Source: Auanema rhodensis
Lineage: Eukaryota > Animalia > Nematoda
Direction: 5' to 3'
DNA: 64,000 nucleotides
Assembly (NCBI GenBank): GCA_964057225.1
Contig: OZ059897.1
Coordinates: forward strand, 5,766,001 to 5,830,000
Each line of letters begins with the position of its first letter. Within the stretch, counting starts at the first letter, position 1. The notes beneath the pieces were generated by a model, which did not search any database, had not been told where the DNA came from, and saw nothing but the letters and a program-made list of their open reading frames with translations. The position numbers were made by a program, and so were the translations under genes. This document shows positions 1,409-33,017 of this stretch, piece by piece.

Positions 1409-9839
<8,431 letters not shown>

Positions 9840-10133: not shown

Positions 10134-10145
10134 GCCCCGCCCACC
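10134..10145. promoter_or_regulatory. GC-box (GCCCCGCCCACC) in the ~400 bp bidirectional promoter between pecanex and sgt-1
   Basis: Sp/KLF-type motif in otherwise AT-rich DNA between divergent starts at 9839 (-) and 10257 (+). Confidence 0.45.
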
Positions 10146-10256
10146 TACTCTTAGGTTTATCATTCATTGATGGTGCTCTTGTATTTTAGGCTTTTACCGT
10201 TGTAATTGTTGATTTAGTAAATTTTTTTCCGAAACAATTTTTTTTTTAAGATTGTG

Positions 10257-12216: not shown

Positions 12217-14773
12217 TCAACAAATTACTCGCTGAATGCAAGAATCTCGAAGGCATTGCAAGGCAGTCTCAGTAAACTTGGGTCGACCTATATTCACTAA
12301 AGGTATTAGTTAATGGAAATATAAAATCAAACCTGAGTAATCGGCATAAGAAATCCATTCCAATTCTGGACAAAATTGTGCTAAATGATATATTGATTTA
12401 TCTGTACAAGCTGTACCACGTATTCTAACTTCACGAAGAGAACATCGCCTGAAACTTAATCTTTTAAACCACCAGTATTACTACTATAGATCACTTGGCT
12501 AAGTTGCAAATTCCTTTGTCAGTAACCCATCTACATCCATTAAAGTTAACAGTCTCCAACCTTCTACAATTATCTCCCAATAAACTAATGAAACGATCAT
12601 CAATTGAATGCATATGTGATGTTTCAAGATCCTTAATTAGTTATTTATATATCGAAATCGAGAAGCTTAATACCACAAGATTTCTGGCTCCTTTAGCTAT
12701 AGCAAAAAGAATGCGATATGTAATTCTCATTCGACATATTTTTAATGATTGTAATCCGGATCCTCTAGATTTGCTGCCACCTTCAAAAGAGAATTAAAAT
12801 CAATATAATAATTAGATGATACGTCTATAGAATATTCTTTCATGATTATTTTATAATAAATAATATTTTATATTTTAGTACTAGTAGGTACATATATAAT
12901 GATAAGGGATTTCAACATCCCATAGAAGTTAACAATTTCTTTTGCAATTTTCGAAAAATATATACCTGCAAAGTATTTCTGAAGAATATTTGTATTTAGA
13001 TGGTTAACTGCTAGTGCTAAATGAGTGAGGTTTGGAGTGTTGTCAAGCAATTGATGTAAAGCTTCATCAAAGAGTCTCCATACAGATACCTAAAAATAGA
13101 TTTGTTTACCAAAAAAAAGTAAACAAATACCTGAAGAATCGTAATTTTGTGTCCCAAATAAGGCATTATACAAGTGAGCAAATTGTTCGCATTGTCTACA
13201 GCTGACTAAATTATTTTGGAATCATGTGATGTCAAGTGCCAAAAATCATTATAGCTTACAATGGTAGCATCTTGAACTGTTAACTGAAGGTTTATGGATT
13301 CTAGATATGGCTGATTCTCCAAACACCGAACTAATGCCATTGGATCTTCATTACCACTAAGGGAAATTCGGATAGAATGAACAGTTGGAGGTAAAACAGG
13401 GAAAATGGCAAAGTAGTTTCCTTTAAATATCAAAACTTTTTAAAATAAACAAAAGAATTATATACCATATAAATCAACATCTCTTAGATTAATTCCATCA
13501 ATTTTGCAAGGTTCTTGTTCCATGCGATCTGTTTCAAAGTTCTGGAATTTGCTCTCATTTTCACATTCTTGAGAATATCATGTGTTATTCATGAAAGTAC
13601 AGTTGTAATTTAAGTGTAGAACCAAACGCTTTTTGAGCATTTGAAGTTTGAATTCAATACAGTAATACTTTCAAGAAATTGTTCACAATTTCAAAGATAT
13701 CCCTTTAGGATATTAGAAGCAAACATACATCTTTAAAAAATCGGGCTATTGAAAGCTGACTTAAATTTGGGCATTGAACTGAAAGATGGTTAAGAGATGT
13801 TCCTGGATTGGAAAGACTTGATGGGAAATCCATTTGAAGAACCTGAAAAACGTTCCCTATTTGCTTTAACTTTTCTTTTTTTGATCTTGAGGAAGTATAC
13901 ACGTTGAAGAGGCAACAAACAAACGATTGATTTTTCAATAAAAAACAAAACGAAAGCATATGGCCTGTTTGTTGTGAGTAAATTGGATGAATCAGAAATT
14001 TTTTTGATTCTTTCGTTGGAAAATTGATTAAAATTAAATGTATTTAAGGTTGACATACTTGTAGACGATCTCCAACATGATCTGCAATGTAGTACAAAGC
14101 TGTATCATCTAGTGCAGAGCAATGATTCAAATATAATGAACGAATATTCTGATGCCGAATTAAGACATCTCGAAGCCCATTACTTGTAAACTGAAGAATT
14201 TTTATATTGCTTGTATGCTCAGATTGTAGAAAAAACCTTTGCACATCCGCTAAGGTCTATTGTATGAAGATAGGGGCTATGTAAGTCGTGTAATGCTTCG
14301 TCTGTAAGTTGATTCATAGCTCTTAGTTCAACTGTATATAGGTTCGATTGAGATCTAGTAGCCCATTGTACACCCTATTTGGGAAAAAAAGATTTTCAAA
14401 TTCATTATATTCAACGTTCTTACTTGATTTGAAATCTTTGTGCATTCGACAAGAGTCATCTTATTCAAACGTTTGTTCAAAACTGTTAATGCTCTAAGCA
14501 TATTGTCTGTCAGATCATGGGTGAGAAAAAACGTCAATTCTGTCAGATTGGTTCCAAAATATGGTGAACATATGAGTCGATCACAATCGAGAGCAGATAA
14601 CTAAAAGTTGAAGTTAATGCAAGAATATATAAAGGTAAATTAAATACTTGATCATGACTAGCAAAAAACTGGAGAAGACGTTCTTTGCATTCTGCTGGCA
14701 TGTAGGCTAGATCATCACTTAACTCATGCTGACAAACTGATGATAGGCATATATTGAACAGAGACCGGACCAT
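12217..14773 (-). CDS. Cysteine-containing leucine-rich-repeat protein (FBXL/AMN1-type LRRs) with an N-terminal BC-box-like motif
   Basis: Repeats such as LHTIDLSGCAKFTSNGL, IRSLYLNHCSALDDTAL, LETVNFNGCRWVTDKGI; starts MVRSLFNICLSSV; ends ...CIQRVIC*. Confidence 0.8.
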
Positions 14774-15496
14774 TTAGAACATGTAAGTGAAGAAGCTCAA
14801 CCTAAAGTTTGAAAGAATGATATAAGGAATATAAGGAAAGTACTTAAACAGCGGTTCATATAGTTTGGAAAAAATGAAATAAAAAATTGCTCAGACAGAG
14901 AAAAGCGAGGAAAACACTCGAGATTCGGACTGACTGTATATCGTCATCTATGAAGAGCAAACATTACTGTTTAAAAGAAGAAAAACTGTGTAGAGTGAAT
15001 AAGAATAAGAATAATATTGCAATTCTCAAAATAATAATAAAATAATGACAATCACACAAATTTCTTGGGGTTTCGTCATCAGTATTACACAGCACAAGGT
15101 TTTTCAACCTGCCAAGAAGATTGAAGAGTTTTTGTTATTTTTGCTTAATACACAATATAAACTTCTAAAATTGCACAAAATTGATATTTTCAATTGATAA
15201 TTAAACAGAAACAATAGTGATAACTTTCAATTAAAGGCTTAAAAGTTGGTGAGGAAGTCAAACATTTGTGTGTTGGCTGTTCTCTCCTGCGGGTATTACA
15301 CAAGAATTGTGTGACAGGAGGCAAAAATCGTTGAAGAGAAGAGGTTGAGGGAAAGGCCAATAAACCACGTGAGCATCCGTTGCGATTCAACTGAATACGA
15401 GATAAAGAAAGATGAGAGAAACTCCAAGCATTTTCAAACCAATGAGAGCAATAACAAGACGTTTTTTTGACGTTTCGTAAAATATATCATCATACC

Positions 15497-16264
15497 TGGC
15501 ATTAAGATAAATTTAATATTGATACATGATTGATACATGATTGATACAACTTGAAAAAGATGGAAAAAACTTAATCCAACCTTTGATTGAGCATTCCTTA
15601 TATGTACTGGTTTAAAGCTCATTAGCATATCAAGGTGTTGCCTCACGCACACCACGTCCCGACAGAATCATTTTTAATTTTCGCAAGACCTGAGGTCGGT
15701 TGCATTCTAATACAAGTTTCCCATGATATTCTGAGAAAAATATGTATTAGATATAGTTAAGAACAAGAAAAGTATTATATAATATACAAAGTTTATTAAC
15801 CTTCAAATAGAAATATATTATAATATTAACAAAAATCTTTTGTTGAAACCTTATAGTTAAGTAAAATACAATTTTTGCATCGTTATGCATTATCACAACA
15901 AGGAATTTAAGTATTAACAATCAAAAACGAAAACAAATACCCAAAATAGATATAGAAACAGCTTATTCCCACGGATGCCACACAGATTCAGATTTAGATG
16001 AGATATTACGTGGAAGGTTGTGTTTTCGAGGTAAGTGAGGAGTAGTGTTACCGGAAATCATTAGACCTACAGGGCTCATCTCAACAGAAGAGCAATCCAT
16101 ATCATCTGATGAAGTATTTGTTGGAGAGGAATTAATAGAATCGTCATAAAGAATTTCTGATCGAATCATACGATCTGGGCTGAAACTTTCCTCTGATGAA
16201 GGTGAAGCTTGTAGCAAACCAGCTGACATAACATCTCTGAAAATAAAAAAGAATGTGAACTTTC
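15497..16264. repeat. 768-bp direct repeat, copy 1 (last exon, 3'UTR and downstream flank of bHLH gene A)
   Basis: Near-identical to 18276-19043; identity stops inside the last intron at GAATGTGAACTTTC. Confidence 0.95.
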
Positions 16265-18494
16265 TACTTCAACTTCTGATATACTTTAAGATATTTTCAA
16301 GTTGGTTGTATTTATATTCCCATTGGCTAGATTCGTTCTTCCATTGGCTTTTTTCCTTCTCTAGTTGATACATATATTCTAAAATTATCAATTTAAACAG
16401 AATTTTGTAAATTGTATATTTACGTTTAGATGTGCGGAGATAAATATTCGCTTGTTGTAGTACATCAGCTTTTTCCATTTTGGAAAAAATGTTTGGATTC
16501 TCATCAAGTAAGAATTGCTTCATTTCGCTCAACTCATTGCTTTCACGCTCACGACGTTGTCGTTCTTTTTGAGATTTCTGAGCCTAAAACAAGAAAGTTA
16601 TCTTGTCAACATACAGAGAATAATAAAATAATGAAAAACAAAAAATCACTAACCTTAGAAGAATCATCAGTAGATATAGTAAAGATGGTGTTAGCAAACA
16701 TAGTGTTAATTCTGAAAAATAGATGAATGAGAAGTTTTAAAACTCTTTTAAACATGATTAAGCTAACAGAATAGTGATAAAATTTAAAAATTATAAGCTG
16801 CAGTTATAAACATAATAGCACAAAACGCTATATATGGAGTGGCACAAATCGTGATTCACGTATTTCCTTCCAATATTCGAAAGTTGAGGGTAAATGGAGG
16901 AATCAGCACTAAAGGGAAGAGAGGAATGTTTGTTTCAAAGGTGATGTCAGTTTCAATGGTGCCGTTGGCTTATGATATCTATTGTAAGAAAACGGAATTA
17001 CTATACCTTGAATGAAGTTTAAAAAAAGGAAAAACAATAATATGAGAAACAATTGTCTAATTTAAATATAAATGAATATAATTCCAACGAGTTCGGTATA
17101 TTTGAAGAAAATCGTTCTTAAAATAAGAAAAAACAAAGAATCGATTCAATTCCGTTCAATGAATCTCTTTGAATGGAGGTAAAAATACACTGGGTCGGAA
17201 ATAGAAGTAATTGTAGTTTGATCAGTTAAGGTTCGACAAGTCTTTCGGGGAGGGAAGCTTACATGAAAAGAGAATTTGGCTTTGAAATTAAGAATTGATG
17301 ATCACAAAAGGTTGATATCTCGATATGCATAGAAACTTCATTGAATAAAGATGTTAAGGAGATTTTTGAAAAATTTGGAAGAGCAGACAGAACGAACACA
17401 GAATGTAGAATGACTATGCGAACTTATGATAATGATGAGGTGGTCGAAGGTTTGACTCATGAATGAGAAAAAGAGTTGCATTTCCCATCTAGGTTGCCGA
17501 AAATAACCAAACAGAAGTCAAATAACAATGAATACGTGAGGCAAGAAGAACATGAGCCTAATATGAAGGATCTTATGTCCAAATAGCTTTGGGTCTTATA
17601 CACTTGTACTTTTAAGGTCAACAGAGGTTAAAGAATCTGAAAAAGTTTTGAACAAGCTTTAGATAATTGATTGATAACCTTACAGCATTTTTATCATTTA
17701 TGAACATGTTATGGAAATTTTTCATCAACACTTGGTTCATAAAGTGATAACAGATGACAGCAGATGTATTGTAACCATAGGATATATTTTCTGTTGAAAA
17801 TAAATTTGAATCAAGTTCATAAATATATTTGAAGAGCAATTCAGAGAACATCCAGAGTTTCATATTGTTTTAATAAAAGTTTGAAGATTATAAATAAGTT
17901 GAAAACAATTCCTAAAGTTGATCTTACGATCACTAATTATCAGTACAGCTGGCAAATCGCTTTTTCATTGAAAGGATAGGTTATATTCTCTACTAACAGT
18001 CTTCCCATAAGATAATCTTCTTATAACGTTATGGGATGTATTAGATTCCCATCATGTTCACACCTTGGCTCACAGAAAAAACCTTTGGAGAACTCTACCA
18101 CAGGCTAGATTCCTTACCAGCTCTCTAATATTCTCAGATTTCAAATTATACCTTCATATTAAAATAAAATAAAATAAATAAACTTTGAATAAACAACGAT
18201 CTGATATAAATAAACTTTAATATACCAAAAAATAAAACTTATAATCACATCGCATCATATTCATTCAATAAGGATTGGCATTAAGATAAATTTAATATTG
18301 ATACATGATTGATACATGATTGATACAACTTGAAAAAGATGGAAAAAACTTAATCCAACCTTTGATTAAGCATTCCTTATATGTACTGGTTTAAAGCTCA
18401 TTAGCATATCAAGGTGTTGCCTCACGCACACCACGTCCCGACAGAATCATTTTTAATTTTCGCAAGACCTGAGGTCGATTGCATTCTAATACAA
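15507..18494. repeat. Left arm (~2.99 kb) of a large inverted repeat
   Basis: Reverse complement of 20114-23110 apart from a few SNPs and small indels. ORF-track peptides mirror each other (15963-16229/22388-22654, 16269-16532/22085-22348, 17618-17863/20745-20990). Confidence 0.97.
15963..16701 (-). CDS. HES/REF-1-related bHLH + zipper protein, copy A (4 exons), C-terminal WHPWE
   Basis: Spliced: MFANTIFTISTDDSSK|AQKSQKERQRRERESNELSEMKQFLLDENPNIFSKMEKADVLQQANIYLRTSK|QYMYQLEKEKSQW...QLENILK|DVMSAG...ESVWHPWE*. KMEKADVL is the HES helix-2 signature. Confidence 0.85.
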
Positions 18495-19043
18495 GTTTCC
18501 CATGATATTCTGAGAAAAATATGTATTAGATATAGTTAAGAACAAGAAAAGTATTATATAATATACAAAGTTTATTAACCTTCAAATAGAAATATATTAT
18601 AATATTAACAAAAATCTTTTGTTGAAACCTTATAGTTAAGTAAAATACAATTTTTGCATCGTTATGCATTATCACAACAAGGAATTTAAGTATTAACAAT
18701 CAAAAACGAAAACAAATACCCAAAATAGATATAGAAACAGCTTATTCCCACGGATGCCACACAGATTCGGATTTAGATGAGATATTACGTGGAAGGTTGT
18801 GTTTTCGAGGTAAGTGAGGAGTAGTGTTACCGGAAATCATTAGACCTACAGGGCTCATCTCAACAGAAGAGCAATCCATATCATCTGATGAAGTATTTGT
18901 TGGAGAGGAATTAATAGAATCGTCATAAAGAATTTCTGATCGAATCATACGATCTGGGCTGAAACTTTCCTCTGATGAAGGTGAAGCTTGTAGCAAACCA
19001 GCTGACATAACATCTCTGAAAATAAAAAAGAATGTGAACTTTC
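18276..19043. repeat. 768-bp direct repeat, copy 2 (last exon, 3'UTR and downstream flank of bHLH gene B)
   Basis: Near-identical to 15497-16264. Confidence 0.95.
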
Positions 19044-19516
19044 ATTTTCAAGGCACATCATACCTTAGACGGTATTCATACTGCTGAAGACGCCGAGCTT
19101 GATCTCTAATGATCTCCTCATTTCTTTCGATACAATTAGATTGCTGTCGGATTGTCTCCTCCATTTTAGTAATGATTTCCTCTTTCATTCTAACATTTTC
19201 TGAATAAAATTTGAATAAAATACTGTATATAACGATGTACAAAACTTACGTCCTAAAGAGGAAATATAGTGAACAGTCTGTTCGAGAATATCAGCTTTTT
19301 CCAGCTTGAAAGGATTATTTGGGAAAACAGATAGAAGAATTTGCTTTAAACGATTTATCAGAGCGTTTTCACGTTCACGGCGTTGGCGTTCCTTTTGTGA
19401 CTTTTGAGCCTAAAAATATCATAGTACTACCATATTTGAAAAGAGAAATATTTTAGAGACAAAATTCGAACCTTAGCGGATTCTTCTCCGGAGACTGGTA
19501 ACGTATTTGCAAACAT
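18742..19516 (-). CDS. HES/REF-1-related bHLH + zipper protein, copy B (4 exons, in the palindrome spacer), C-terminal WHPWE
   Basis: Spliced: MFANTLPVSGEESAK|AQKSQKERQRRERENALINRLKQILLSVFPNNPFKLEKADILEQTVHYISSLG|..NVRMKEEIITKMEETIRQQ...YEYRLR|DVMSAG...WHPWE*; canonical KLEKADILE. Confidence 0.88.
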
Positions 19517-20113
19517 GATTTTGAAAGAAAATCTATAAAAATATAAATTAGGTGAGATTTGAATATATACTATATAAAATTGTAAGAGTGAAATATCATA
19601 AAAGATAACCAATTCTAATCAGAATCAAGTCTACCGCTTAGCACGAGAGTGATTGTTCGTTGGTATGAAGGAGTTGTTACAGTTACATGGAGGTTGGACT
19701 TGAGTGGGCGGAGCCAGATTAGGTCAGATGAGAAAAAGTGAATATCAAAGTTGAACATGCTAACGGCAAGAAACACATGAACTAGACAAGTGAAAACAAT
19801 ATTTCAAAATACAAAACTATAAACTTTATGATAATTTGATTATTCCTATAAGTATTGGGCAATGAATAAAAAAAATAGTTTTTATTGTTAACACAAAAAA
19901 AAATGTTTAGCCAAGGGTAATTTTAAATGTTAAACCGGAAATATTTTGTAGTTTGATCATCACGAAATAAAAACTTAACCAATAGGAGTCATACAAAAAA
20001 AATTTTCCTTATAACCTGCGGCGAATAATTCAAATTATATAATGTATCGATTTTATAAATGACTTTTAATTCTTTGTCAGTACTGAATCTGAGATAACAC
20101 TACATCTGGTTCT

Positions 20114-23110
20114 TTGTATTAGAATGCAACCGACCTCAGGTCTTGCGAAAATTAAAAATGATTCTGTCGGGACGTGGTGTGCGTGAGGCAACACCTTGAT
20201 ATGCTAATGAGCTTTAAACCAGTACATATAAGGAATGCTTAATCAAAGGTTGGATTAAGTTTTTTCCATCTTTTTCAAGTTGTATCAATCATGTATCAAT
20301 CATGTATCAATATTAAATTTATCTTAATGCCAATCCTTATTGAATGAATATGATGCGATGTGATTATAAGTTTTATTTTTTGGTATATTAAAGTTTATTT
20401 ATATCAGATCGTTGTTTATTCAAAGTTTATTTATTTTATTTTATTTTAATATGAAGGTATAATTTGAAATCTGAGAATATTAGAGAGCTGGTAAGGAATC
20501 TAGCCTGTGGTAGAGTTCTCCAAAGGTTTTTTCTGTGAGCCAAGGTGTGAACATGATGGGAATCCAATACATCCCATAACGTTATAAGAAGATTATCTTA
20601 TGGGAAGACTGTTAGTAGAGAATATAACCTATCCTTTCAATGAAAAAGCGATTTGCCAGCTGTACTGATAATTAGTGATCGTAAGATCAACTTTAGGAAT
20701 TGTTTTCAACTTATTTATAATCTTCAAACTTTTATTAAAACAATATGAAACTCTGGATGTTCTCTGAATTGCTCTTCAAATATATTTATGAACTTGATTC
20801 AAATTTATTTTCAACAGAAAATATATCCTATGGTTACAATACATCTGCTGTCATCTGTTATCACTTTATGAACCAAGTGTTGATGAAAAATTTCCATAAC
20901 ATGTTCATAAATGATAAAAATGCTGTAAGGTTATCAATCAATTATCTAAAGCTTGTTCAAAACTTTTTCAGATTCTTTAACCTCTGTTGACCTTAAAAGT
21001 ACAAGTGTATAAGACCCAAAGCTATTTGGACATAAGATCCTTCATATTAGGCTCATGTTCTTCTTGCCTCACGTATTCATTGTTATTTGACTTCTGTTTG
21101 GTTATTTTCGGCAACCTAGATGGGAAATGCAACTCTTTTTCTCATTCATGAGTCAAACCTTCGACCACCTCATCATTATCATAAGTTCGCATAGTCATTC
21201 TACATTATGTGTTCGTTCTGTCTGCTCTTCCAAATTTTTCAAAAATCTCCTTAACATCTTTATTCAATGAAGTTTCTATGCATATCGAGATATCAACCTT
21301 TTGTGATCATCAATTCTTAATTTCAAAGCCAAATTCTCTTTTCATGTAAGCTTCCCTCCCCGAAAGACTTGTCGAACCTTAACTGATCAAACTACAATTA
21401 CTTCTATTTCCGACCCAGTGTATTTTTACCTCCATTCAAAGAGATTCATTGAACGGAATTGAATCGATTCTTTGTTTTTTCTTATTTTAAGAACGATTTT
21501 CTTCAAATATACCGAACTCGTTGGAATTATATTCATTTATATTTAAATTAGACAATTGTTTCTCATATTATTGTTGTTTTGTTTTTCCTTTTTTTGAACT
21601 TCATGCAAGGTATAGTAATTCCGTTTTCTTACAATAGATATCATAAGCCAACGGCACCATTGAAACTGACATCACCTTTGAAACAAACATTCCTCTCTTC
21701 CCTTTAGTGCTGATTCCTCCATTTACCCTCAACTTTCGAATATTGGAAGGAAATACGTGAATCACGATTTGTGCCACTCCATATATAGCATTTTGTGCTA
21801 TTATGTTTATAACTGCAGCTTATAATTTTTAAATTTTATCACTATTCTGTTAGCTTAATCATGTTTAAAAGAGTTTTAAAACTTCTCATTCATCTATTTT
21901 TCAGAATTAACACTATGTTTGCTAACACCATCTTTACTATATCTACTGATGATTCTTCTAAGGTTAGTGATTTTTTGTTTTTCATTATTTTATTATTCTC
22001 TGTATGTTGACAAGATAAACTTTCTTGTTTTAGGCTCAGAAATCTCAAAAAGAACGACAACGTCGTGAGCGTGAAAGCAATGAGTTGAGCGAAATGAAGC
22101 AATTCTTACTTGATGAGAATCCAAACATTTTTTCCAAAATGGAAAAAGCTGATGTACTACAACAAGCGAATATTTATCTCCGCACATCTAAACGTAAATA
22201 TACAATTTACAAAATTCTGTTTAAATTGATAATTTTAGAATATATGTATCAACTAGAGAAGGAAAAAAGCCAATGGAAGAACGAATCTAGCCAATGGGAA
22301 TATAAATACAACCAACTTGAAAATATCTTAAAGTATATCAGAAGTTGAAGTAGAAAGTTCACATTCTTTTTTATTTTCAGAGATGTTATGTCAGCTGGTT
22401 TGCTACAAGCTTCACCTTCATCAGAGGAAAGTTTCAGCCCAGATCGTATGATTCGATCAGAAATTCTTTATGACGATTCTATTAATTCCTCTCCAACAAA
22501 TACTTCATCAGATGATATGGATTGCTCTTCTGTTGAGATGAGCCCTGTAGGTCTAATGATTTCCGGTAACACTACTCCTCACTTACCTCGAAAACACAAC
22601 CTTCCACGTAATATCTCATCTAAATCCGAATCTGTGTGGCATCCGTGGGAATAAGCTGTTTCTATATCTATTTTGGGTATTTGTTTTCGTTTTTGATTGT
22701 TAATACTTAAATTCCTTGTTGTGATAATGCATAACGATGCAAAAATTGTATTTTACTTAACTATAAGGTTTCAACAAAAGATTTTTGTTAATATTATAAT
22801 ATATTTCTATTTGAAGGTTAATAAACTTTGTATATTATATAATACTTTTCTTGTTCTTAACTATATCTAATACATATTTTTCTCAGAATATCATGGGAAA
22901 CTTGTATTAGAATGCAACCGACCTCAGGTCTTGCGAAAATTAAAAATGATTCTGTCGGGACGTGGTGTGCGTGAGGCAACACCTTGATATGCTAATGAGC
23001 TTTAAACCAGTACATATAAGGAATGCTTAATCAAAGGTTGGATTAAGTTTTTTCCATCTTTTTCAAGTTGTATCAATCATGTATCAATCATGTATCAATA
23101 TTAAATTTAT
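20114..23110. repeat. Right arm (~3.0 kb) of the large inverted repeat
   Basis: Begins TTGTATTAGAATGC (pairs with 18481-18494) and ends TTAAATTTAT (pairs with 15507-15516). Confidence 0.97.
21915..22654 (+). CDS. HES/REF-1-related bHLH + zipper protein, copy C (inverted duplicate of copy A)
   Basis: TTTTTCAG acceptor ending at 21904, ATG at 21915, three GT-AG introns, same protein as copy A. Confidence 0.85.
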
Positions 23111-26100
23111 TCGAGGGTTTCCGTATTCTTTGCTTTTTCTGTTTGTTGTTTCAAACTTTTCATAAATCTCCTTAACATCTTTATTCAATGAAGTTTTTAC
23201 GCATTCGCATATCGTGATATCAACCTTTCTTAATCATCAACTCTTAATTTCAAATACAAATACATATTCTAATGGTATACATCATTTCAAACAAAAATCA
23301 TAATTCTTAGTTAAAAAAAATCTATGTACATGAAAGACATTGTAGTTTGAAGAAATTTTTGAAGCTTTTCAGAAAGCTGCTAGTTCTTGAAGAACATGTA
23401 ACTTCTGCATTGGCAGTGTTTCGTGGGTTTTTTTGGTTTGAAAAGTACATTTATATATACACACATTGCGACCATTTGGGGAAACAAAATGATGAAACGG
23501 AAATTTTAATTTCCAAGCTAAGGCAACTCAGGTTTTTTTTTCTAGTTTTGTGGCTGACCAATCGACTCTTCGTGTCAACAGTTACAGGTTGGGGAGCCAA
23601 ACTGATCCTGGCAAGATGTCAGAAGAGCTTGGCATCATTTTTTTTGGAAATCTGGGACAGAAGAAAGGGCACTCTCTCCCGTAGAAATAACTTTGCAGTT
23701 TCAGGGTAGAAGAGTTGATGGGTCCTGTACACATCACCGGGGCTGAAATGCCGACCGGTGTAACCGATACGACGACAAAATTTATAAAAATAACATCTGA
23801 AAATAAAAATAAAATTGCCGATTATGTAAGATTTTAAAACTTACATATATAGTTGAAAGTATGTATGAGAATATGTATTTGAAATGACAAAAAGTTGATA
23901 GAAACTCCTCAGATGGTTACACTTCCACTCATTCAATATCAAACATCATAGAAAATTTGGATGTTCTTAATGTTCAGACTATTACGAGGTTTAATCCCCC
24001 CAAAAGCACTGACAGGCATCCCAAGTTTGACGTGATTGAATCCTTCAGATCTTACTGGATTCCTAAAATGAGATATTTTAATATTAACGTACTTGAAAAC
24101 TAAAACAAATCACATGAAACAAGGCTAGAAAAAATATAATATATTGTATAATTATGAAATTTCGAATAGTTAAATGTACAATGAGGGAGACGGATGAAAT
24201 TCGTAAGGCCTCGGGCGACATGCACTAGTTATGAGTGAACATCTATAAAGATGAAAGAGGATGAGAAGAGAAATACAATGAGTGAGAAAGCGAAAGAGAA
24301 AATAGGAGAAAAGAGAAATGCGACCATCCTGTACGTTGAATATGCGCAAAATGAAGATTTAGATTTAGAAACTGTCACATGACCCAACCGTCAAATTACA
24401 ATTTTATAATCTGTGCAAAACTATTAGCAGTTTCATTAAGTTATTTCAAAAATGTAATAAATTTTAGTTTATTGGAAGTATTATAAAAACTTTTCTTCTT
24501 TCGTTTTCTTATACTATACATCTAATGAAATTTCAAAAAAGGTATGTAATGATTACCTGACAACATGAAATAAATGAAAAAAAATTAATGAAGTACTTGA
24601 GAGTATTCATTATGAAATAAATAATAACTAAAACTCCTCATATATACTTCTTTTATTAGTGAAATGAAAAAATTAAGAAGGCTTCAAAGTTGAGCGGATT
24701 CGTATAGCGCTTTCATGCATCAACCGCGGAGTAGATTCCAAACAATCGTCCGCCCTGCTGGAGCTGGACTGCTGCTGAGATAGCGCAACAAACGAGGAGA
24801 GAGTGGACAGCCAGCCGGGAATTTCATACAATGAATCGGAGGGCTGGCATTTGCAAATGTCTGAACAACTCGCCTCCCCTTTCCTCTCTCTCTCCCTCTC
24901 TTTCTTTTCCACACTCATATTTTCCTGCAATCTATCATGTCCAGTATGAACTTGCCACCCCCCCCAAAACTGGAGTTTTCAAAATTCATATAATAGCAGA
25001 ACTGGACAAGAAAATCTGATTGCTGCGAAATAGTTAAATAAAATTATAAAATACTGGTGCATCCCTTGAATGAACTAGAATATATAATATACAACATGAT
25101 GAAACTGAATAAATGTCATCCTATTCTAAAAGAACATAACGAGAATTCAATTTAAATATGAAATTGTTGAAACGTATAATTTTGTGTTACCTCAAGACAT
25201 ACTGAACTGTAGGTATTATGTAATAAAAATGTCACTCAGCAACAAAATTATGAAGAAAGAAGTAAAATAAAGCGGCTAGTATTTGGGCCAGACATTACGA
25301 AATGCTCCTATTGCACAACCAGCTTGTCCTTAGATCATGGCGAATACCCGGACACGATAACGGCCATTCGATGGAAATATAATGAATATTTGAAGCAGAC
25401 AAGTCATAGAGAGTGTGTGACAACTACATTTGAGGAGCACATAGACAAGTCGACATTGGAGGTATTATTTATGTCTGAGAGCTTGCAGACAACTGCTATC
25501 GGTCAGACAGCCCATTGCGTAATGGCTCGCTGGCTCGCGCTGGCTCGTGGCTTTGCCCAGTTAGTTCCCTTGTCTCTGCTCTCACTATTTCATTCAGTGT
25601 CTTTCTCACTCTAACTGGTCAAGATCTCATACTGGAGAGAACACTATTTCTATTCTCTCTCGTCTCCTTTTCTCTATTTCTCCGTTATTTTCTTTCTCTC
25701 GTTTATAATGTTCATATTGTAGATATGCATTATACTATTCTGATCTCTCTCTATCTTCTTCTATCTCTCTCCTCGCTCTCCTCTCCTAATTTCTCCTGAC
25801 TCTTTAAACTTTATAATTCCCTCTTTCATAGTTTCACTTACTAAGTCTCTTATTTCGTTCCAATACCTCATATTCTTCTCATTTCATTTCATCGACTATC
25901 TCTTCTCTCACTCCCTCTTTCTCTCTCTCCCTCTCTTTTCTGCTTCGTTGTATTCGTTTCTACGGGCTTTTCGCATAGCTAAATGCGAGGGCAAGTGCAA
26001 GTGTAATGCTATTCCACTCTAGCACAATCATATTTCGCGCATAGCAACACTATACATCATCTGTGGAGCATAAATGGGTATAAAACTAAATCTGTTAATA

Positions 26101-28257
26101 CTCCAATATAGTAATATTATTCTAAAGTATATATTATAATTAAAAAGGATTTACTAAAGCAGTTAGTGATAACACATAATATTCTATTCATGTGTTAATT
26201 GATTTTCCATACTAATCTTCTAATTCGTAATAAAGATAATGGGGAAAGAGTAATATATAAGAGAAAAGAGAAACAGAGAAAGCTTTAATGATTCTAATAA
26301 TCGTACATTAGTCAGTTTCAAACTACATCCGACTTATAGAAATAGTAATAATATTGTTTGAGCAATGCTTGGGTCAATAACACGATGAAATGGAAATAAA
26401 AATGAAAATCAGCTCATAAAACAGTGAAATATGATTTTGAGATGCTGATGCTGATGATAGTAAACATAGAGTGCACGACAGACATTATAAACAGCTCTTT
26501 GTGTCTTCTATAGTTTGATGAGAGCACAGTTCTGTGAAATGGACAGAATGATTGCAAACCATAAGTATAAATAAAATGAAGATTATATATTTAGAAATTT
26601 AAGACGAAAGGGAACGTCGCCGTAGTTCAAATGAAGCGAGCGTCTGGCTTATCTTTTGTTGAAATGTGGACGGAGAGCGAATTTGAAGGTTTCGCATATG
26701 TATGAAGATGATATGCAAATCACACAAAACGTAAAGATGGAGAGAAAATGAAGAAAGGGAGAGGAGACGAGAACGCTCATGGTACGATGAGGATATCGGA
26801 GTTTAGAGACAGTGATATATCAAGAGAAAAGTGAAAATCGGTTCTTGCCCAATGTTCCTTGTTCCTTTCTTCATCTCCTTATTTCATCTAGCTTCTCAGG
26901 AGAATTATCTTTCTTTTCTACTTTCATCATTATTCTTGTCTATCTTCGTTTCAACCTGAAACTGCCCTTTATTAGATTCTTCAATAAGGCGATCTTCTCA
27001 TCTCATCTCTATAAATTTCTTTCGAGATCAACGAACCTGAATTTGAAATTCATTTGAGTCTCCGTTATACTCTACGATTTCTCATAATCGAACGGTATAT
27101 CATTCAAGTTGTCTCTTCCTCTCAGATACTATTTCATTGTTATAATAAATTCGCAATCTGTACCACAATAAAATATATGCATGTGGCATTTGAATACAAG
27201 AGATCCTTCTTTGAATTATTATATATTAAAGTTCCTAAGTTGATCTTTTATTTCTTGCAGTGGTGGTCTCCTATCTCAGAAATATGCAGTTACATGGTAG
27301 TCTTCAAATCAGTAGAAAATAGCATATTCTGATAAATTGTGTCAAACATAATATTATATATTACAACACCTGAATTATGACGCAAATCACGTTTAAGTTT
27401 AATTATAAAGATTTAAAGTTAATAAATAAAACAAAATTAGAAAAAAACTACTTAATTATAATTATAATTATAATAATAAAAATAAAAATAAAATTAACGT
27501 ACCTTAAAATATTAATAATAATAATTGTTGTATGCAACCGCTCTCCACGTAACTTTGTTTGAAATGAATTTGACACGTGCCGCACGTTTCTTACCATATT
27601 AAGTTATTTACAATGCATTTTATATGCTAATTACATATTTCATTATATTTAAATATCATGAATCAAGTTCTTTTGCTATAAAAAGATGTTTACTAAAAGA
27701 TATTTGGTAGTGTGAGAAAAGTAAATAAAGTCAATAATCGTTGTACTGATAACATGGGAATCTTTTAGTAAAAATGCAAAGCAGTAAAAAGATTTTCTTC
27801 AAACAATCATTTTTCAAATACTTTATTATGCTTTTTATAAAAACAAAATTACATTTTAAAACAATATATCTCCAAATTATTATTTTTTTCTTTTGTTTTT
27901 TTTAGAAAAAAAAATGCACAATTAATTAACAACTGTCATAAGTGTTCATACACGTAGTTGAGATCAAAATCCTAATGATTTGCAGTTTCTACCTTAAGCT
28001 GTTAGATTAAATAATCCAGCAGATGAAATTTTAGTAGAAATGCAAGCCATACGAGGAACATTTGGAATTTTAATGGCTATAATGCATACCAAATGATATG
28101 CTATACGTTCGATACGTATATACAAATTGGAGTAAAAAATGTTGGGAAAGTCAAAAAGTACAGGGATGTACTTCATTAACATGGCATGATTTGGATAATT
28201 TGGGAAGATGTATAGAAATACGACTAGGTATTGGTTATAATACAGAAAATGTGAGAC

Positions 28258-29051
28258 TTAAAGATAGGGCTGCCACACCGTTTTCCTAGGCTGAGACCGA
28301 ATAGTTGTTTCGAGTTTAGTTGGAGATACAGAATGGCAATGTCTCGAATCTTCTGGGGATTCAGATGGCGATGATGTTGGTGTTAATGGAGTCCATTTGC
28401 CAGAATTTGAGGGCATGTTACCGTTCCCTGTTGCACATGTTGTTGGTGATGTTCCTCGAAAAATGGCAGGATTTGTTTGAATCATAGAATTTCTTAAACG
28501 TAATTATTTTCATGATTTGGAGAAATTGTTGTACTCACCTCAAATGTGTTACAAGTCCCAAATGAAATTGTTGAGCACGAGCATCTGTCTGTGGTGGCAT
28601 CATCATGGCTAGGTATGTGAAAACAGCTCGAGAGCACTGAGTAAATCCTTCTTCTATTCCTTCCAGTCTACCCTTCTCATATGCTTCTTGAGCTTCTGAA
28701 CAGAGACATTAATTCACTACATTTATTCAAATCTTACTAATGACATCTTGAGGAATTCCACGCTGTTGCTGTAATTGGCGAATACTGATTACTGTACGTT
28801 CTAGTATATCCGCTTTTTCAAGTTTAGTGACTCTGAAATTAAAATTAATCTTTTGAACAATGAGAAACTCAATTCTACCTATCATGTGGAGCAAATTGAA
28901 GTAAAAATTCTTTTAAATTATTCAAAGAATCATTTATTCTCTGTCTTCTCATTTTCTCCATCATAGGTTTTTTAATTTTTCTATCACGAGTAGCATGTAG
29001 TAGCAGATCTGCTTGATAAGATGAACGTGATGTTGTCGGAAAACAAGACAT
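28258..29051 (-). CDS. Hairy/E(spl)-family bHLH-Orange transcriptional repressor (lin-22/hairy-like), 4 exons, ends VWQPYL
   Basis: Basic region with the HES proline (RKIKKPMMEKMRRQRINDSLNNLKEFL); helix 2 (KLEKADILERTV); Orange domain (EGFTQCSRAVFTYL...LVTHL); S/T/P-rich linker; WRPW/WRPY-like tail. Confidence 0.92.
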
Positions 29052-32000
29052 TCCTACAAAAAAAAACATTATGCACAGTTTAAAAGGGAATTTAAACAAT
29101 TAAAATCACGAAAAATCGAGAAGTACGAATAAAATTGTTCATCACGACTGGTGAGGAAGAAAATGAATAATGGTAATATTCATTGTTTTATGAAGAAAAA
29201 AAAAGAATTACAATCTTTTGATGAGAAGAGGAATACATAAATGAAGTGAGAAAGACGAAAAAACATGACTACCGTACCCTTGTCTAGCACCCAGTGGCCG
29301 TATTTGGCAACAACAGAAGTTCAGCTCAGCCATGTTGGCTTCAGATTTTTATCTTAATGAGCCTATTAAGGTACTACGTCATGGACGGTTCCCTCGAAAA
29401 CGCAACGTTCATAAGATTTATGTCACATTTCCACTATTTTAAAAAAGAAAGCTAGATGAGATTGCATACAGGTTGTCAAGCGATTGGTTATAAATTAAAA
29501 TGTAAATGTTTACAGACACAATGCTTCGAATATTTTTTTTTAGAAAAGAAGCTTCAGCAGCATCATTGATAGAAGTGAATCGAAACTCTGAAAGGGCTTG
29601 AAAAATGTTTTGTGTAAAGCTTTCGTAATGAAGTAAATTCTTTCGATAGAAAAATTGAAATATAAATCCAAGTAGATGTCAGACACAAGTAGTTAAAAAG
29701 TAGAGATTACTGTAGAATAGTGAAAAAACAGTCTTAGTTGTTGGAAAAGGAGATGAACATAAGTATGAATATAGAAAGAATAACTAATAAGTAGTTGCTA
29801 ACTAGAGTTTCAGATGAATCACAGCTCAAACACGGAAGAACGTGATAAGACTGAAGACCGGCACGCTTATTAAGACGATAAAACCGCCTCTGCCTAATTG
29901 ACTAATTATCTGTGACGAAGGCTAATCACAAATCCTCTTAAGATGATTCTCTCTTTGCGGCTCCGTCCAACAACTTTCTCATGACCTCTTACACACGAAG
30001 CTTATCATACAAGTGGCATGCGACAAGGTTCCTTGCAAGTCAAATACCGTAATCGCCATAGGTACATATACGCATGCAGAACAATTTCTGAAATTTCAAG
30101 ACCAAGCAAAGTTTTTCATCAAGAATGAAAATCTTTGAGTTTTTTAATTGCCAGACAAGAATATAGAGTCTTCAAAAAGATCTTCTAAAATTGATTGTGA
30201 TTGAGATTTTAGATGAGAGAGACGATCAATTGCTAAACTACAGGAAACGCCGTATATTATTTATGAAAACGTTCAAGCTTGTGGAGCAAGAACGATAGAA
30301 AACATGAAAAACGACAACAGAGGAGGTTGGAAAAGGAACCATACACATGGAATAGAAGATGATAAAACCGGATGAAATGTTTGTAATTTATCCTGGAAAC
30401 TCAAAACATTTTTCTCTCCACCTACTCAAAAGTTCATATTACAGATATGAAATGTTGGGCATGTAAGTAGATCGGTATACGAGCTTGTTAAGAAATTTAA
30501 AAATACTTCAAAAACTAGGAGAGGCGTTTATTCATTTCATAAATATGGAAATAGAAGCTGTTGGAATTAATGTATCAAAACATTTTAAAGAAACAGAGTT
30601 AGTAAATGTGATTGAACGAGGATTGACCGACTGATGGCTTGTCGGAAGTGTGGTAAGGTCGCAAAGGATTTGATGGGTGGGACGAGGTGATGGCATCAAG
30701 TCGGATGGACAACCACTGTTCTACAGCTGGTAACGAGAAGATATGAAGTGAGAAAAGAAGATTATATTATAAATAGATAGAGATAAAGAAATAGTTTGAG
30801 AGAAAAGAAGAGGTCGAGAGATGTTAGCTATAGCCTGAATCAAAAGACAGAGCGCTGTGTGATGTCGTTGACTGGTTGTAATGGTTAGCAGAGAAACAAG
30901 CGGCTCATCAAAGGGCTTGTCCCGACCCTACTATTAACAGGCAATATTCTGTTCGGTGACAAATGTGGAAGAGGGAAGAAACAGAAAACGGAAGATGAAG
31001 AGAAAGAAGAAGCTCGTAGAATCATTCGTCAGCAACTTAAGTGCGATTCCGGCAGACTTCGGGAAGTATAGAAAATCACATGGCTACGACAGGAGAACAC
31101 GCAACAGCTACTCTGTTCCTTGCTTAGAGCACATTAATTTCCACAAAGACATCTCTTACTTGACCGATAAAACGAACGAGAAACATGATGAGGCAAACTA
31201 CAACGAGCGAAAAAAAGTTGGAAGTGTTTAAGAAGTCAGAGTCTGTTCAGATCATAAACGCTAGAGCAAGGAATTCTTGGCGCAAACCACAAAAGACATT
31301 CGAAGAGGGGGCGTGACGATGACACTTAAACACTATCCCTCTGATGGCCAACGACCGATATGAAAACCGTTAACTACAGTACAAGTGTTGAAGTTTTGTT
31401 TTTTTATTGGAGAACATGGGGGGATAGTCTACTATAGTCAAAATTTTGCAAACAACTAAACAGATTGTTTAGGTATATCCAGACATTTTTTTTTGCTGTA
31501 TAAAATAACTGTCCTTCAGACGCACTCTATACTTAGCGCTTCTTGATCATTAAAAATAGCACTACGCAAAAAATCTGAACGAACGAACATGCTATCCTTT
31601 TACAAAGGTCTATTATACTCTTCTCTTTAACTACGTCTAAAGTCAATGAGCTGGAGGTAAAACATGTGAACTGGTCAGAGTCTTCCACGATTGACATATT
31701 CAGGCTGTTATTTTAATGTTTTCGGATGTACAGCTCAATATCGTGCAAAAAAGCCCATGAGCGAACCGAAGTAGAAAAAAAAAGATTTTTCAATTTTTTG
31801 TCGGTTTCCGACAAAAGAGGATCCACAAGGTCTGCCTGATGAAGCAGCTGTCTGCTTTGTATACGGGTGCGAATGTTTCTTCTGTCTCAACATGTTCACA
31901 TTTTATTTCTTGTTCAATTTTCGGTAGATGTTGCCATCTATGTCCTGTTGATAAGATGAGGCGCTAATTTTTATTTGTTTTCCTATGTTGTAATAGAGCT

Positions 32001-33017
32001 CACAGTAAGACACTGGACAATGTAGTTGTCCTCGAAATTACGTTTGCAGTTATATTTTTTCTTTTAGAAAAAAAGATATTGAAGGACGAACTGATGTTTC
32101 AATCTATCGACAAATTTGAAATTTTTGGAGAGCGAAAGTAAATCCTCAGGTCACAAAATCTTTAGATAGTTGTAAGATAATTGTGTATGATAATATGTGG
32201 ATCAGTTGGCGTATCCTTTTGCGGGAACATAATTAATAGGTTCAACCTCACGACCTTGGTACGGATCAAACATGATATCCGGTTAGCTCCAGGCAGATTA
32301 GGTGACATCATAAACCTAAATGGTTACGAGATTCCGCGAGGAGAAGGAGGCCCATTTGATCTAATTGACGGGAGAAAAGTAGAAATAGCAAGTAAAAGGA
32401 AGTACAGAATAACATAAATAGAATATTTGCCAAACTGACCAATAAATAGCAACCGGACGCGCTGACGTAAAAAACCAAAATGGAAAATGCTAATTAACTG
32501 ATTCGCACGCAATGAATCTGCCTGCCACGTCAGTGACGTGAACAATATGATATGCTGGATCTTATACGAAGAAAGATATCTAATAGATATCAAGTTTAAA
32601 GCCCTTTTTGTTTTAAATTGATTGTAAAGCATAATTTAGGTTTCGGTGAAAACTTTTGTACTCAATTTCATTGCATAAGTTAAAGAAAAACATAAGAGGG
32701 CTTTTATGAGTTTATCGGCTAGGTTTAGTGTCCAAGGCTGTAGATGGTATGTACAGCAACTAGTGATAAAATCAACCTCGTAAAACTAATTAGTTGTCTT
32801 GTGCAATGCGTCTTGGTCGTAAATACGCGCGAATGCGAGATGTGAGTTGCGAGTTTATGAGAATTCGCAACCGGCTTTAGAATTGTTGCGAAAAATAAAT
32901 ACTAGAACGATTGACTGCAATGAATAGTAAAACGAGAGAAAGAACAATATACGTCTAGCTAGAGCGTTGAGCCAAAATATCACCGACTGATGATTTAGGT
33001 ATCGAAATTCAGCTTCA

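What the first reader, a model, noticed from the sequence alone, without database searches (positions are those of the whole stretch)
15497..29051. Four-gene Hairy/E(spl)-related bHLH cluster: a candidate nematode 'Enhancer-of-split complex'
Seen: within ~13.5 kb there is one canonical bHLH-Orange HES gene (28258-29051) and three divergent single-bHLH genes (A, B, C). All share the K[LM]EKAD[IV]L helix-2 signature and a C-terminal Groucho-type motif. Known: clustered Notch-responsive HES genes are an arthropod feature (E(spl)-C); C. elegans instead uses the REF-1 family (two bHLH domains, FRPWE tail) and lin-22. Inference: this may be an independently assembled cluster, with A/B/C derived locally from the HES gene or representing single-bHLH REF-1 relatives. 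Pecanex, a neurogenic Notch-pathway gene in Drosophila, lies 6 kb to the left, which may be coincidence.
Basis: partly seen in the sequence, partly recalled or inferred. Interest (0 to 1): 0.85.

Follow-up and report, generated by a model that had tools for sequence, protein, structure and literature searches.

The report
Nematode HES-type bHLH gene cluster
A nematode locus holds one Hairy/HES-type gene and three expressed small repressor-like genes, two of them near-identical mirror copies, that combine a HES-like DNA-binding domain, a zipper and a Groucho-type tail; they look like single-domain cousins of the worm REF-1 family, but a Notch link is not shown.

Summary
The stretch carries four group-E (HES-class) bHLH genes.

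- **H** (28258-29051, minus strand) has a bHLH, an Orange-like region and a WQPYL tail.
- **A, B and C** are 191-204 aa proteins with one bHLH, a heptad zipper in place of Orange, a disordered linker and a WHPWE tail.
- **Copies:** A and C encode the same protein. They lie in a 7.6-kb inverted repeat whose arms are 99.7% identical. All three genes share a homogenised last exon and 3' UTR. So the locus encodes three distinct proteins, not four.
- **Expression:** spliced contigs in two RNA-like public runs confirm every intron of A/C and B.
- **Copy number:** unitig depths in a DNA run (1x, 2x, 3x, about 4x) match the assembled copy numbers.
- **Ancestry:** in Auanema sp. JU1783 the same syntenic block (Pecanex, SGTA, FBXL, bHLH, HES, 4HBT) holds a single B-like gene. 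The H + B pair is therefore ancestral, and A/C is a lineage-specific addition.
- **Relatives:** after the JU1783 ortholog, the nearest relative of B is a Pristionchus two-bHLH protein with an FRPWM tail (REF-1-like). The remaining hits are nematode and vertebrate HES proteins. The tree favours the REF-1-like grouping, but AU tests do not exclude descent from H.
- **Notch:** responsiveness is untested. LAG-1-type motifs are modestly enriched in the arms and absent upstream of H.

The "E(spl) complex" reading is only an analogy, and its premise is wrong: HES clusters are not specific to arthropods. Other notes of this scan, on this same stretch, already describe the palindrome, the shared exon, the zipper and the LAG-1 motifs.

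The parts
15963..16701 (-). Gene A. It has 4 exons and encodes 191 aa: one HES-type bHLH (exon 2, 16583-16424), a zipper exon with an L-W-W-L-V heptad (16378-16285), and a shared last exon ending in WHPWE.
   Evidence: Gene model. Pfam HLH hit. All introns confirmed by spliced contigs. Heptads shown.
18742..19516 (-). Gene B. It has 4 exons and encodes 204 aa: a bHLH (19409-19250), a nine-heptad L/I/V zipper (19199-19064), and a shared last exon ending in WHPWE. It is the copy closest to the single Auanema sp. JU1783 gene.
   Evidence: B matches the JU1783 gene at 40 of 53 bHLH residues, against 31 of 53 for A.
21915..22654 (+). Gene C, the inverted copy of A. Its protein is identical to that of A.
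   Evidence: translation identical to A. (arms 99.7% identical).
28258..29051 (-). Gene H, a Hairy/HES-type gene. It has 4 exons and encodes 219 aa: a bHLH with the basic-region proline (KKPMMEK), the HES-type intron in the loop, an Orange-like exon (28695-28539), and a WQPYL tail.
   Evidence: It is 73% identical to the JU1783 neighbour gene.
15507..18494 (.). Left arm of the 7.6-kb inverted repeat. It holds gene A plus 1.6 kb of upstream sequence.
   Evidence: Unitig depth is about 2x that of the spacer in DNA run X1.
20114..23110 (.). Right arm of the inverted repeat, holding gene C. The spacer 18495-20113 holds gene B.
15497..16264 (-). Homogenised 3' module: the last exon, the 3' UTR and about 240 nt of flank. 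It is repeated at 18276-19043 and at about 22343-23110. A and B differ here at 3 of 768 nt, whereas synonymous sites in their bHLH exons are saturated.
   Evidence: Depth is about 3x in run X1.
20490..20606 (+). Conserved non-coding element in the shared B-C intergenic region, with a mirror copy at 18002-18118. It carries two ATGGGAA (LAG-1/CSL-type) motifs and a T-box-like string, TTCACACCT. One motif is exactly conserved in JU1783.
23311..26518 (.). Seven collinear conserved non-coding blocks between C and H, 74-93% identical to the JU1783 locus.
29298..30970 (.). Conserved blocks upstream of H: 29298-29440 (91%), 29892-30054 (78%) and 30592-30970 (83%). No RTGGGAA motif lies upstream of H.
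5475..14812 (.). Left syntenic flank: Pecanex (up to 9742, minus strand), SGTA (10238-11500, plus strand) and an FBXL15-type F-box/LRR gene (12319-14812, minus strand).
32685..37891 (.). Right syntenic flank: 4HBT thioesterase genes (32685-33537, 34480-34939, 35265-35504) and eIF2D (35800-37891). This flank is shared with the C. auriculariae locus of a two-bHLH gene with a WQPWL tail.

Best explanation
A, B and C are functional, transcribed members of a fast-evolving nematode branch of the Hairy/E(spl) superfamily. They sit next to the conserved Hairy/HES-type gene H.

Each protein appears to be a small transcriptional repressor built from four parts:
- a basic region with the K5/E9/R13 pattern and no HES proline, which is inferred to bind class B/C E-boxes such as CACGTG, as the C. 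elegans proteins REF-1 and HLH-26 do;
- an HLH whose helix 2 runs straight into a heptad zipper that takes the place of the Orange domain, inferred to set dimer strength and partner choice;
- a disordered Ser/Pro-rich linker;
- a C-terminal WHPWE, inferred to recruit Groucho/UNC-37.

The locus history is shown in part. An ancestral H + B-like pair is shared with Auanema sp. JU1783. An old duplication produced the A type, since synonymous sites between A and B are saturated. A recent inverted duplication, or continuing arm-to-arm gene conversion, keeps A and C 99.7% identical. Gene conversion has also homogenised the last exon and 3' UTR of all three genes.

The genes are best described as single-bHLH, zipper-bearing relatives of the REF-1 family. 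Regulation by Notch through the ATGGGAA motifs in the arms is plausible but not shown.
For: **Class**
- HES-1 is the top solved-structure match for A, B and the JU1783 ortholog.
- Exhaustive phmmer gives the JU1783 gene P0001 first (72 bits). Next come the P. pacificus two-bHLH FRPWM protein and the C. auriculariae two-bHLH WQPWL protein, among nematode lin-22-like and vertebrate HES proteins.
- The alignment shows the shared KLEKADIL helix 2 and the shared KERxRRxRE basic region.

**Function retained**
- Spliced transcripts are present.
- For the A versus B bHLH exon, dN is 0.39 and pS is 0.71.
- The 15 basic-region codons carry 7 synonymous changes and 1 non-synonymous change.

**Architecture**
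- Unbroken heptads run on from helix 2.
- The AF2 model of P0001 has helices at 12-44 and 52-110 (pLDDT 95-98), followed by a disordered tail.

**History**
- Synteny and collinear conserved non-coding elements link the window to the JU1783 locus, which has one gene.
- Depths of 188, about 380, 572 and 699 fit 1, 2, 3 and 4 copies.

**REF-1 kinship**
- The tree split has 97/98 support.
- The tails match the WxPWE/FRPW type: HRPWE in P0037 and FRPWM in P0002.
- A two-bHLH gene in C. auriculariae sits beside the same 4HBT-eIF2D pair.
- C. elegans hlh-26 is C17C3.8 (PMC8936500), on the same cosmid as the acyl-CoA thioesterase C17C3.3 (PMC2689271).

**Notch hint**
- One arm has 4 non-coding RTGGGAA motifs against 0.48 expected (P about 0.002), and none lies upstream of H.
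- One motif is conserved in JU1783.
Against: - No C. elegans REF-1 or LIN-22 sequence could be fetched, so kinship rests on P. pacificus and C. auriculariae proteins identified only by their architecture.
- The tree uses 62 columns and has long branches. AU tests do not reject A/B/P0001 + H as one clade (p = 0.11), nor A/B/P0001 alone as a clade (p = 0.08).
- The C. auriculariae domains fall on the HES side of the tree. They keep the loop intron that A, B and C lack.
- Synteny with C. auriculariae is one-sided. The P. pacificus locus shows none.
- The non-coding LAG-1-type motifs are all ATGGGAA, which from my own knowledge is the weaker variant. They are co-oriented and not arranged as paired sites. 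The test was post hoc.
- DNA binding, dimerisation and Groucho binding are all inferred from sequence.
- The tissue and stage of the RNA runs are unknown.
Confidence: 0.7

Rival explanations
1. This is a nematode counterpart of the E(spl) complex. On this reading, A, B, C and perhaps H are direct LAG-1/CSL targets that carry out Notch signalling.
For: RTGGGAA occurs 22 times in the window against 12.7 expected, and 14 of those lie in 15.5-23.1 kb. One arm has 4 non-coding motifs against 0.48 expected. Two motifs sit in an element conserved with JU1783. C. elegans REF-1 family genes are Notch targets that act with UNC-37/Groucho (PMC11457946, PMC3601818).
Against: Two of the six motifs in each arm are simply the codons for PWE and QWE. 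The rest are ATGGGAA only, all on one strand, with no paired head-to-head sites. None lies upstream of H or in the 600-nt spacer upstream of B. In JU1783 the enrichment is not significant: 7 against 3.7, with 6 of 100 shuffles reaching that count. There are no expression data under Notch perturbation. The genes arose from recent duplication and conversion, not as a set of diversified effectors.
Confidence: 0.3
2. A, B and C derive locally from the neighbouring HES gene H by tandem duplication. They then lost the loop intron, the basic-region proline and the Orange domain, and they have no special kinship to the REF-1 family.
For: A HES gene and a B-like gene are adjacent in two species. The intron just before the basic region is shared with a lin-22-like gene (P0005). 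The AU test does not reject A/B/P0001 + H as a clade (p = 0.11). The affinity to P. pacificus could be long-branch attraction (warning).
Against: The unconstrained tree puts H with lin-22-like genes of distant nematodes and separates A, B and P0001 from them with 97/98 support. The constrained tree is 8.2 lnL units worse. The basic-region string KERxRRxRE is shared with the P. pacificus REF-1-like protein and with no HES protein.
Confidence: 0.2
3. A, B and C are group-B bHLH-zipper proteins of the Max/Mad/USF type that acquired a WxPW tail by convergence.
For: The language-model search of the ESM Atlas lists Max-like clusters first (0.85-0.86, below the 0.9 level at which the tool treats a hit as more than a lead). 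USF2 is the second solved-structure match across the bHLH plus zipper (E = 0.005). ERxRR in the basic region is common in group B (my own knowledge).
Against: No Max, Mad, Myc or MITF chain appears even at E<=10. Apart from spurious repetitive matches and a few hits not examined, the significant hits in 1.84 billion proteins are HES-class. The KLEKADIL helix 2 and the WxPW tail are group-E marks. A HES gene is the neighbour.
Confidence: 0.04
4. The palindrome, and therefore the count of four genes, is an assembly artefact.
For: Near-identical inverted repeats are error-prone in assemblies. Public contigs break at every repeat boundary, so no single record spans an arm.
Against: The arms differ at 8 substitutions and 2 indels. 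Variants specific to one copy appear in contigs of other runs, at 15990, 16826 and 20565. The depth ratios of 1:2:3:3.7 match the assembled copy numbers in run X1. Unitigs cross the spacer-to-arm junction and the flank-to-arm junction by 30 nt.
Confidence: 0.05

Closest known systems
C. elegans REF-1 family (REF-1, HLH-25 to HLH-29)
   Same: Both are highly divergent HES relatives without an Orange domain and without the basic-region proline. Both carry a C-terminal xxPWE-type Groucho motif (FRPWE in REF-1 is my own knowledge, not found in the paper library). Both tend to occur as identical duplicated copies: hlh-25 with hlh-27, and hlh-28 with hlh-29 (PMC4683635, PMC3606163). REF-1 and HLH-26 bind CACGTG (PMC8936500), which is the binding predicted here. 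There may also be positional homology through a neighbouring thioesterase gene.
   Different: REF-1 family proteins are defined by two bHLH domains, whereas A, B and C have one bHLH plus a zipper. No C. elegans sequence could be compared directly. Notch dependence is shown for the REF-1 family and is untested here.
Auanema sp. JU1783 protein CAI4226242.1 (P0001, 'unnamed protein product')
   Same: It has the same four-exon structure, an identical basic region, a zipper, a disordered linker and a WQPWQ tail. It also has the same synteny between an FBXL15-type gene and the HES gene.
   Different: It is a single gene at the locus, with no palindrome. It is 60% identical to B and 50% identical to A.
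Hairy/HES proteins, including nematode lin-22-type genes
   Same: The helix-2 signature, the group-E basic-region pattern and the WxPW-type tail match. H is a regular member: it has the proline, an Orange-like region and the loop intron.
   Different: A, B and C lack the proline, the Orange domain and the loop intron. According to PMC11457946, C. elegans LIN-22 itself lacks the Groucho motif, which H retains in variant form (WQPYL).
Drosophila E(spl) complex
   Same: Both are clusters of several HES-class repressor genes with Groucho-binding tails.
   Different: E(spl) genes are diversified bHLH-Orange genes with paired Su(H) sites and shown Notch control. Here two copies are near-identical, no paired sites exist, and Notch control is untested. 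Hes clusters are common across Metazoa (PMC4172395).
bHLH-zipper factors (Max, USF)
   Same: Helix 2 continues into a heptad zipper.
   Different: The bHLH sequence is HES-like, not group B. The WxPW tail is not a feature of Max or USF.

Membership tests
Hairy/E(spl) (HES) family | bHLH of group E with helix 2 of the KLEKADILE type | tested here: met
   Pfam HLH hits. HES-1 is the best solved-structure match for A, B and P0001. Alignment.
Hairy/E(spl) (HES) family | Proline in the basic region (KPxxEK) | tested here: not met
   A, B and C have Ser at that position (KSQKER). H has the proline (KKPMMEK).
Hairy/E(spl) (HES) family | Orange domain after the bHLH | tested here: not met
   In A, B and C a heptad zipper takes its place and Pfam gives no Orange hit. 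H has an Orange-like exon by alignment, but Pfam is silent on the exon alone.
Hairy/E(spl) (HES) family | C-terminal WRPW-type Groucho-binding motif | tested here: inconclusive
   Variant motifs lie at the very C-terminus: WHPWE in A, B and C, and WQPYL in H. Binding was not tested.
REF-1 family | Two bHLH domains in one protein (PMC4683635, PMC3606163) | tested here: not met
   A, B, C and P0001 each have one HLH. P0002 and P0006 have two.
REF-1 family | bHLH domains group with REF-1 family domains in a phylogeny | tested here: inconclusive
   They group with the P. pacificus two-bHLH FRPWM protein at 97/98 support. AU tests are not decisive. No C. elegans sequence was obtainable.
REF-1 family | Direct Notch/LAG-1 target | not testable with these tools
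   Only motif counts are available: 4 against 0.48 expected in the non-coding part of one arm, with one motif conserved in JU1783.
E(spl)-complex-like Notch effector cluster | Several linked HES-class genes | tested here: met
   Four genes lie within 13.1 kb. They encode three distinct proteins.
E(spl)-complex-like Notch effector cluster | Paired, head-to-head CSL sites in the promoters | tested here: not met
   All RTGGGAA motifs in an arm lie on one strand. The nearest pair is 44 nt apart in direct orientation.
Group-B bHLH-zipper (Max/Mad/USF) | bHLH sequence closest to group-B members | tested here: not met
   No Max or Mad chain appears at E<=10. USF2 scores only E = 0.005, behind HES-1. 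The representative search returns HES-class hits.

The most novel reading that the evidence does not exclude
The locus may preserve the single-bHLH stage of the nematode REF-1 lineage, still linked to the HES gene from which it arose. It may be positionally homologous to the C. elegans hlh-25/26/27 cluster. That cluster has two identical copies, hlh-25 and hlh-27. That they flank the diverged hlh-26 rests on my memory of the gene order. If so, the two-bHLH Notch effectors of Caenorhabditis evolved from zipper-bearing single-bHLH genes like B. Palindromic, conversion-maintained identical copies would then be a recurrent, selected feature of this gene class, with the conserved ATGGGAA element mediating Notch input.
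Probability: 0.25. Interest if true: 0.65.

Novelty: new variant of a known kind. Interest (0 to 1): 0.45.

Why it matters
The REF-1 family carries out Notch signalling in C. elegans embryos. It is so divergent that its origin from HES genes, and its existence outside Caenorhabditis, remain unclear.

This locus offers an expressed HES-type bHLH + zipper + WxPWE gene that lies beside a regular HES gene, is conserved in a second species, and is nearest in sequence to a Pristionchus two-bHLH protein. That gives a concrete intermediate for testing how the family arose.

It also gives a clean small example of a gene-bearing palindrome combined with exon-level gene conversion. The significance is limited to nematode evo-devo. 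The architecture is a variant of known parts, and no function was tested.

Tried and rejected
- **Word-indexed homology searches.** Searches with P0001, P0006 and P0002 returned only the queries themselves, plus one metagenomic relative of P0002. No C. elegans REF-1 or LIN-22 sequence could be brought into the tree, and no group-B outgroup was available.
- **Spliced proteins as queries.** A, B and H could not be submitted by reference, so the searches used single exons or the JU1783 ortholog.
- **Rfam.** The whole window gave no hit.
- **ESM Atlas.** It suggested Max-like clusters at 0.85-0.86. I rejected this after sequence searches gave HES-1 and no Max or Mad.
- **P. pacificus locus of P0002.** It shares no synteny with the window.
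- **C. auriculariae left flank.** Its FBXL gene is not the window's ortholog.
- **M. belari lin-22-like locus.** It shows no B-like gene within 10 kb.
- **Papers.** Neves & Priess 2005 is not held. "FRPWE" occurs in no held paper.
- **Order of duplication events.** The orientation of the conserved element favours the right arm as native. The way the 219-nt repeat abuts B favours the left arm as native. I leave this open.

Full report
**What is there**

The ORF list and the sequence allowed exact gene models with GT..AG introns of 42-71 nt.

| Gene | Strand | Exons | Protein |
|---|---|---|---|
| A | minus | 16701-16654, 16583-16424, 16378-16285, 16236-15963 | 191 aa |
| B | minus | 19516-19472, 19409-19250, 19199-19064, 19015-18742 | 204 aa |
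| C | plus | 21915-21962, 22034-22193, 22239-22332, 22381-22654 | 191 aa, identical to A |
| H | minus | 29051-28879, 28832-28738, 28695-28539, 28492-28258 | 219 aa |

Pfam HLH hits the bHLH exons of A, B and H. The helix-2 signature occurs exactly four times in the 64-kb window, once per gene. A, B and C end in WHPWE and H ends in WQPYL.

**Repeat structure**

The region is not four independent genes.

- Positions 15507-18494 and 20114-23110 are inverted arms of 2988 nt. They differ by 8 substitutions and 2 indels (99.7% identity).
- B sits in the 1.6-kb spacer between the arms.
- A 768-nt module (last exon, 3' UTR and about 240 nt of flank) is present behind A, B and C. A and B differ there at only 3 positions.
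- A 219-nt piece of that module occurs a fourth time, at the inner end of the right arm.

By contrast, the bHLH exons of A and B are old. Synonymous sites are saturated (pS 0.71) while dN is 0.39. The 15 basic-region codons carry 7 synonymous changes and 1 non-synonymous change. That pattern indicates purifying selection on diverged paralogs whose 3' ends have been homogenised by gene conversion.

**Are the genes and copies real?**

I laid contigs of four public runs on 15400-21300.

- Two small RNA-like runs hold spliced contigs with exactly the predicted joints: 16236/16285, 16378/16424 and 16582/16653 for A/C, and 19015/19064, 19199/19250 and 19408/19471 for B. All have GT..AG ends on the minus strand.
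- In DNA run X1, unitig depths are 188 (spacer), 376-391 (arms), 572 (3' module) and 699 (219-nt repeat). These fit 1, 2, 3 and about 4 copies.
- Variants specific to one copy, at 15990, 16826 and 20565, appear in the contigs.

An assembly artefact is unlikely. No single record spans an arm, so the inverted orientation rests on the assembly and on junction unitigs.

**Class of the bHLH**

- phmmer of the B bHLH exon against 1.84 billion representatives gave 28 significant hits.
- The best hit, P0001 (72 bits, 78% identity), is an unnamed 193-aa protein of Auanema sp. JU1783.
- The next hits include P0002, a P. pacificus protein with two bHLH domains ending in FRPWM, and P0006, a C. auriculariae protein with two bHLH domains ending in WQPWL.
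- Most of the rest are nematode lin-22-like proteins ending in WRPF or WRPY, and vertebrate HES proteins. Four hits are spurious multi-stretch matches and a few were not examined.
- HES-1 is the best solved-structure match for A, B and P0001. No Max or Mad chain appears at E<=10.

The ESM Atlas feature search listed Max-like clusters at 0.85-0.86. This fits the architecture, not the sequence. Helix 2 runs into an unbroken heptad zipper: L-I-V-I-I-I-I-L-L in B and L-W-W-L-V in A. An AF2 model of P0001 has helices at 12-44 and 52-110 at pLDDT 95-98, followed by a disordered tail. So A, B and C are HES-type bHLH + zipper + WxPWE proteins. They lack the Orange domain, the basic-region proline and the loop intron that H, P0002, P0005 and P0006 all keep.

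H is a regular Hairy/HES gene. It has the proline and the loop intron. Its third exon aligns with the Orange region of nematode and vertebrate HES proteins. Pfam Hairy_orange does not hit that exon on its own, and orthologs score only 13-25 bits.

**Synteny and history**

The JU1783 locus reads 4HBT, HES (287 aa), P0001, FBXL15-type gene, SGTA, Pecanex. It is collinear with the window, in inverted orientation, gene by gene. It also shares a chain of conserved non-coding blocks: 15229-15457, 20494-20561, seven blocks in 23311-26518, then 29298-29440 (91%), 29892-30054 and 30592-30970.

- JU1783 has one gene where the window has three.
- B is the closer match to that gene (40 of 53 bHLH residues, against 31 of 53 for A).
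- The H + B-like pair is therefore ancestral for this clade, and the A/C type is an addition. The alternative, a loss or assembly collapse in JU1783, was not tested.
- Pecanex linkage is conserved synteny and nothing more.

The order of the duplication events could not be resolved. The conserved element at 20494-20561 is collinear with JU1783 in the right arm, whereas the 219-nt repeat is contiguous with B only in the left arm.

**Relation to the REF-1 family**

- A, B, C, P0001 and P0002 share the basic-region string KERxRRxRE.
- A Pristionchus-like relative of P0002, P0037, ends in HRPWE.
- A maximum-likelihood tree of 26 bHLH domains (62 columns) separates {A, B, P0001, both P0002 domains} from all HES/lin-22-like domains and from both P0006 domains, with 97/98 support.
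- Long branches are involved. AU tests do not reject A/B/P0001 + H as one clade (p = 0.11), nor all REF-1-like domains together (p = 0.28).
- In C. auriculariae, P0006 lies beside the same 4HBT-eIF2D pair that follows H in the window. The other flank is not orthologous.
- In C. elegans, hlh-26 is C17C3.8 (PMC8936500) and C17C3.3 is an acyl-CoA thioesterase (PMC2689271). This hints that the hlh-25/26/27 cluster is positionally related.
- hlh-25 and hlh-27 give identical mRNAs (PMC4683635), and hlh-28 and hlh-29 give identical products (PMC3606163). Identical duplicated copies are thus a known habit of this gene class.
- That hlh-25 and hlh-27 flank hlh-26 as C17C3.7 and C17C3.10, and that REF-1 ends in FRPWE, are from my own memory and were not verified here.

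No C. elegans sequence could be obtained. A, B and C fail the defining two-bHLH feature, so I describe them as single-bHLH relatives of the REF-1 family, not as members.

**Notch**

RTGGGAA occurs 22 times in the window against 12.7 expected.

- Each arm has six co-oriented motifs. Two of them are the codons for PWE and QWE.
- The four non-coding motifs of one arm compare with 0.48 expected (P about 0.002, post hoc).
- Two of them (18002 and 18046, mirrored at 20600 and 20556) lie in the element conserved with JU1783. There, one motif is exact and the other is ATGGGAT. A T-box-like TTCACACCT lies next to them.
- All are ATGGGAA, and none forms a head-to-head pair.
- None lies upstream of H.
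- In JU1783 the count is not significant.

This pattern matches what is described for C. elegans, where REF-1 genes but not lin-22 are Notch targets (PMC11457946, PMC3601818). It remains a hint, not a demonstration.

**Verdict**

The cluster is real and expressed, and it belongs to the HES superfamily.

The "Enhancer-of-split complex" label is an analogy built on a wrong premise, since Hes clusters were found in all 14 metazoan genomes examined in PMC4172395.

What deserves attention is a zipper-bearing, single-bHLH, WxPWE-tailed HES derivative. It is conserved beside a regular HES gene in two species, and here it has been amplified into a conversion-maintained palindrome.

Other first-stage notes on this same stretch (palindrome, shared exon, zipper, LAG-1 motifs) agree with what I measured. 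A further note reports another palindromic bHLH pair elsewhere in this genome, which I could not examine.

Noticed in passing
window 30592-30970 (matches L001 2318-2672): This 383-nt block upstream of H is 83% identical to JU1783, which is more than the H coding exons (70%). It has stops in all frames across the block. The JU1783 annotation starts its 287-aa HLH gene here (MPSPRPTHQILC...). The block may be an upstream exon or leader, or an enhancer.
   Followed up: partly
window 29298-29440: This 143-nt element, 250-390 nt upstream of the H start codon, is 91% identical to JU1783. It is the best-conserved stretch of the whole locus.
   Followed up: no
window 20494-20561 and 18047-18114: The conserved element in the arms holds a near-perfect T-box half-site (TTCACACCT, the reverse of AGGTGTGAA) directly beside the LAG-1-type motif. 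The surrounding block TCCCATCATGTTCACACCTT.GCTCACAG is shared with JU1783.
   Followed up: partly
window 32685-35504: At least three 4HBT (thioesterase) gene copies lie in tandem before eIF2D. C. auriculariae has one annotated gene at the matching place.
   Followed up: no
L003 10001-12291 (C. auriculariae P0006): This two-bHLH protein with a WQPWL tail keeps the HES-type loop intron in both domains and sits beside 4HBT-eIF2D. It may derive from the H-type gene by internal duplication instead of from a B-type gene.
   Followed up: partly
another piece of this genome (note s1-387538): An earlier first-stage note reports a second palindromic bHLH gene pair with identical promoters and DNA-binding domains. 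If it is REF-1-like, palindromic bHLH pairs recur in this genome.
   Followed up: no
runs X1-X15: The stretch is held almost completely (0.89-0.94 of sampled words) by DNA runs labelled with three different organism codes from three studies. In run X7 the arm-to-spacer depth ratio is nearer 1.2-1.5 than 2, so copy number may differ between strains or samples.
   Followed up: no
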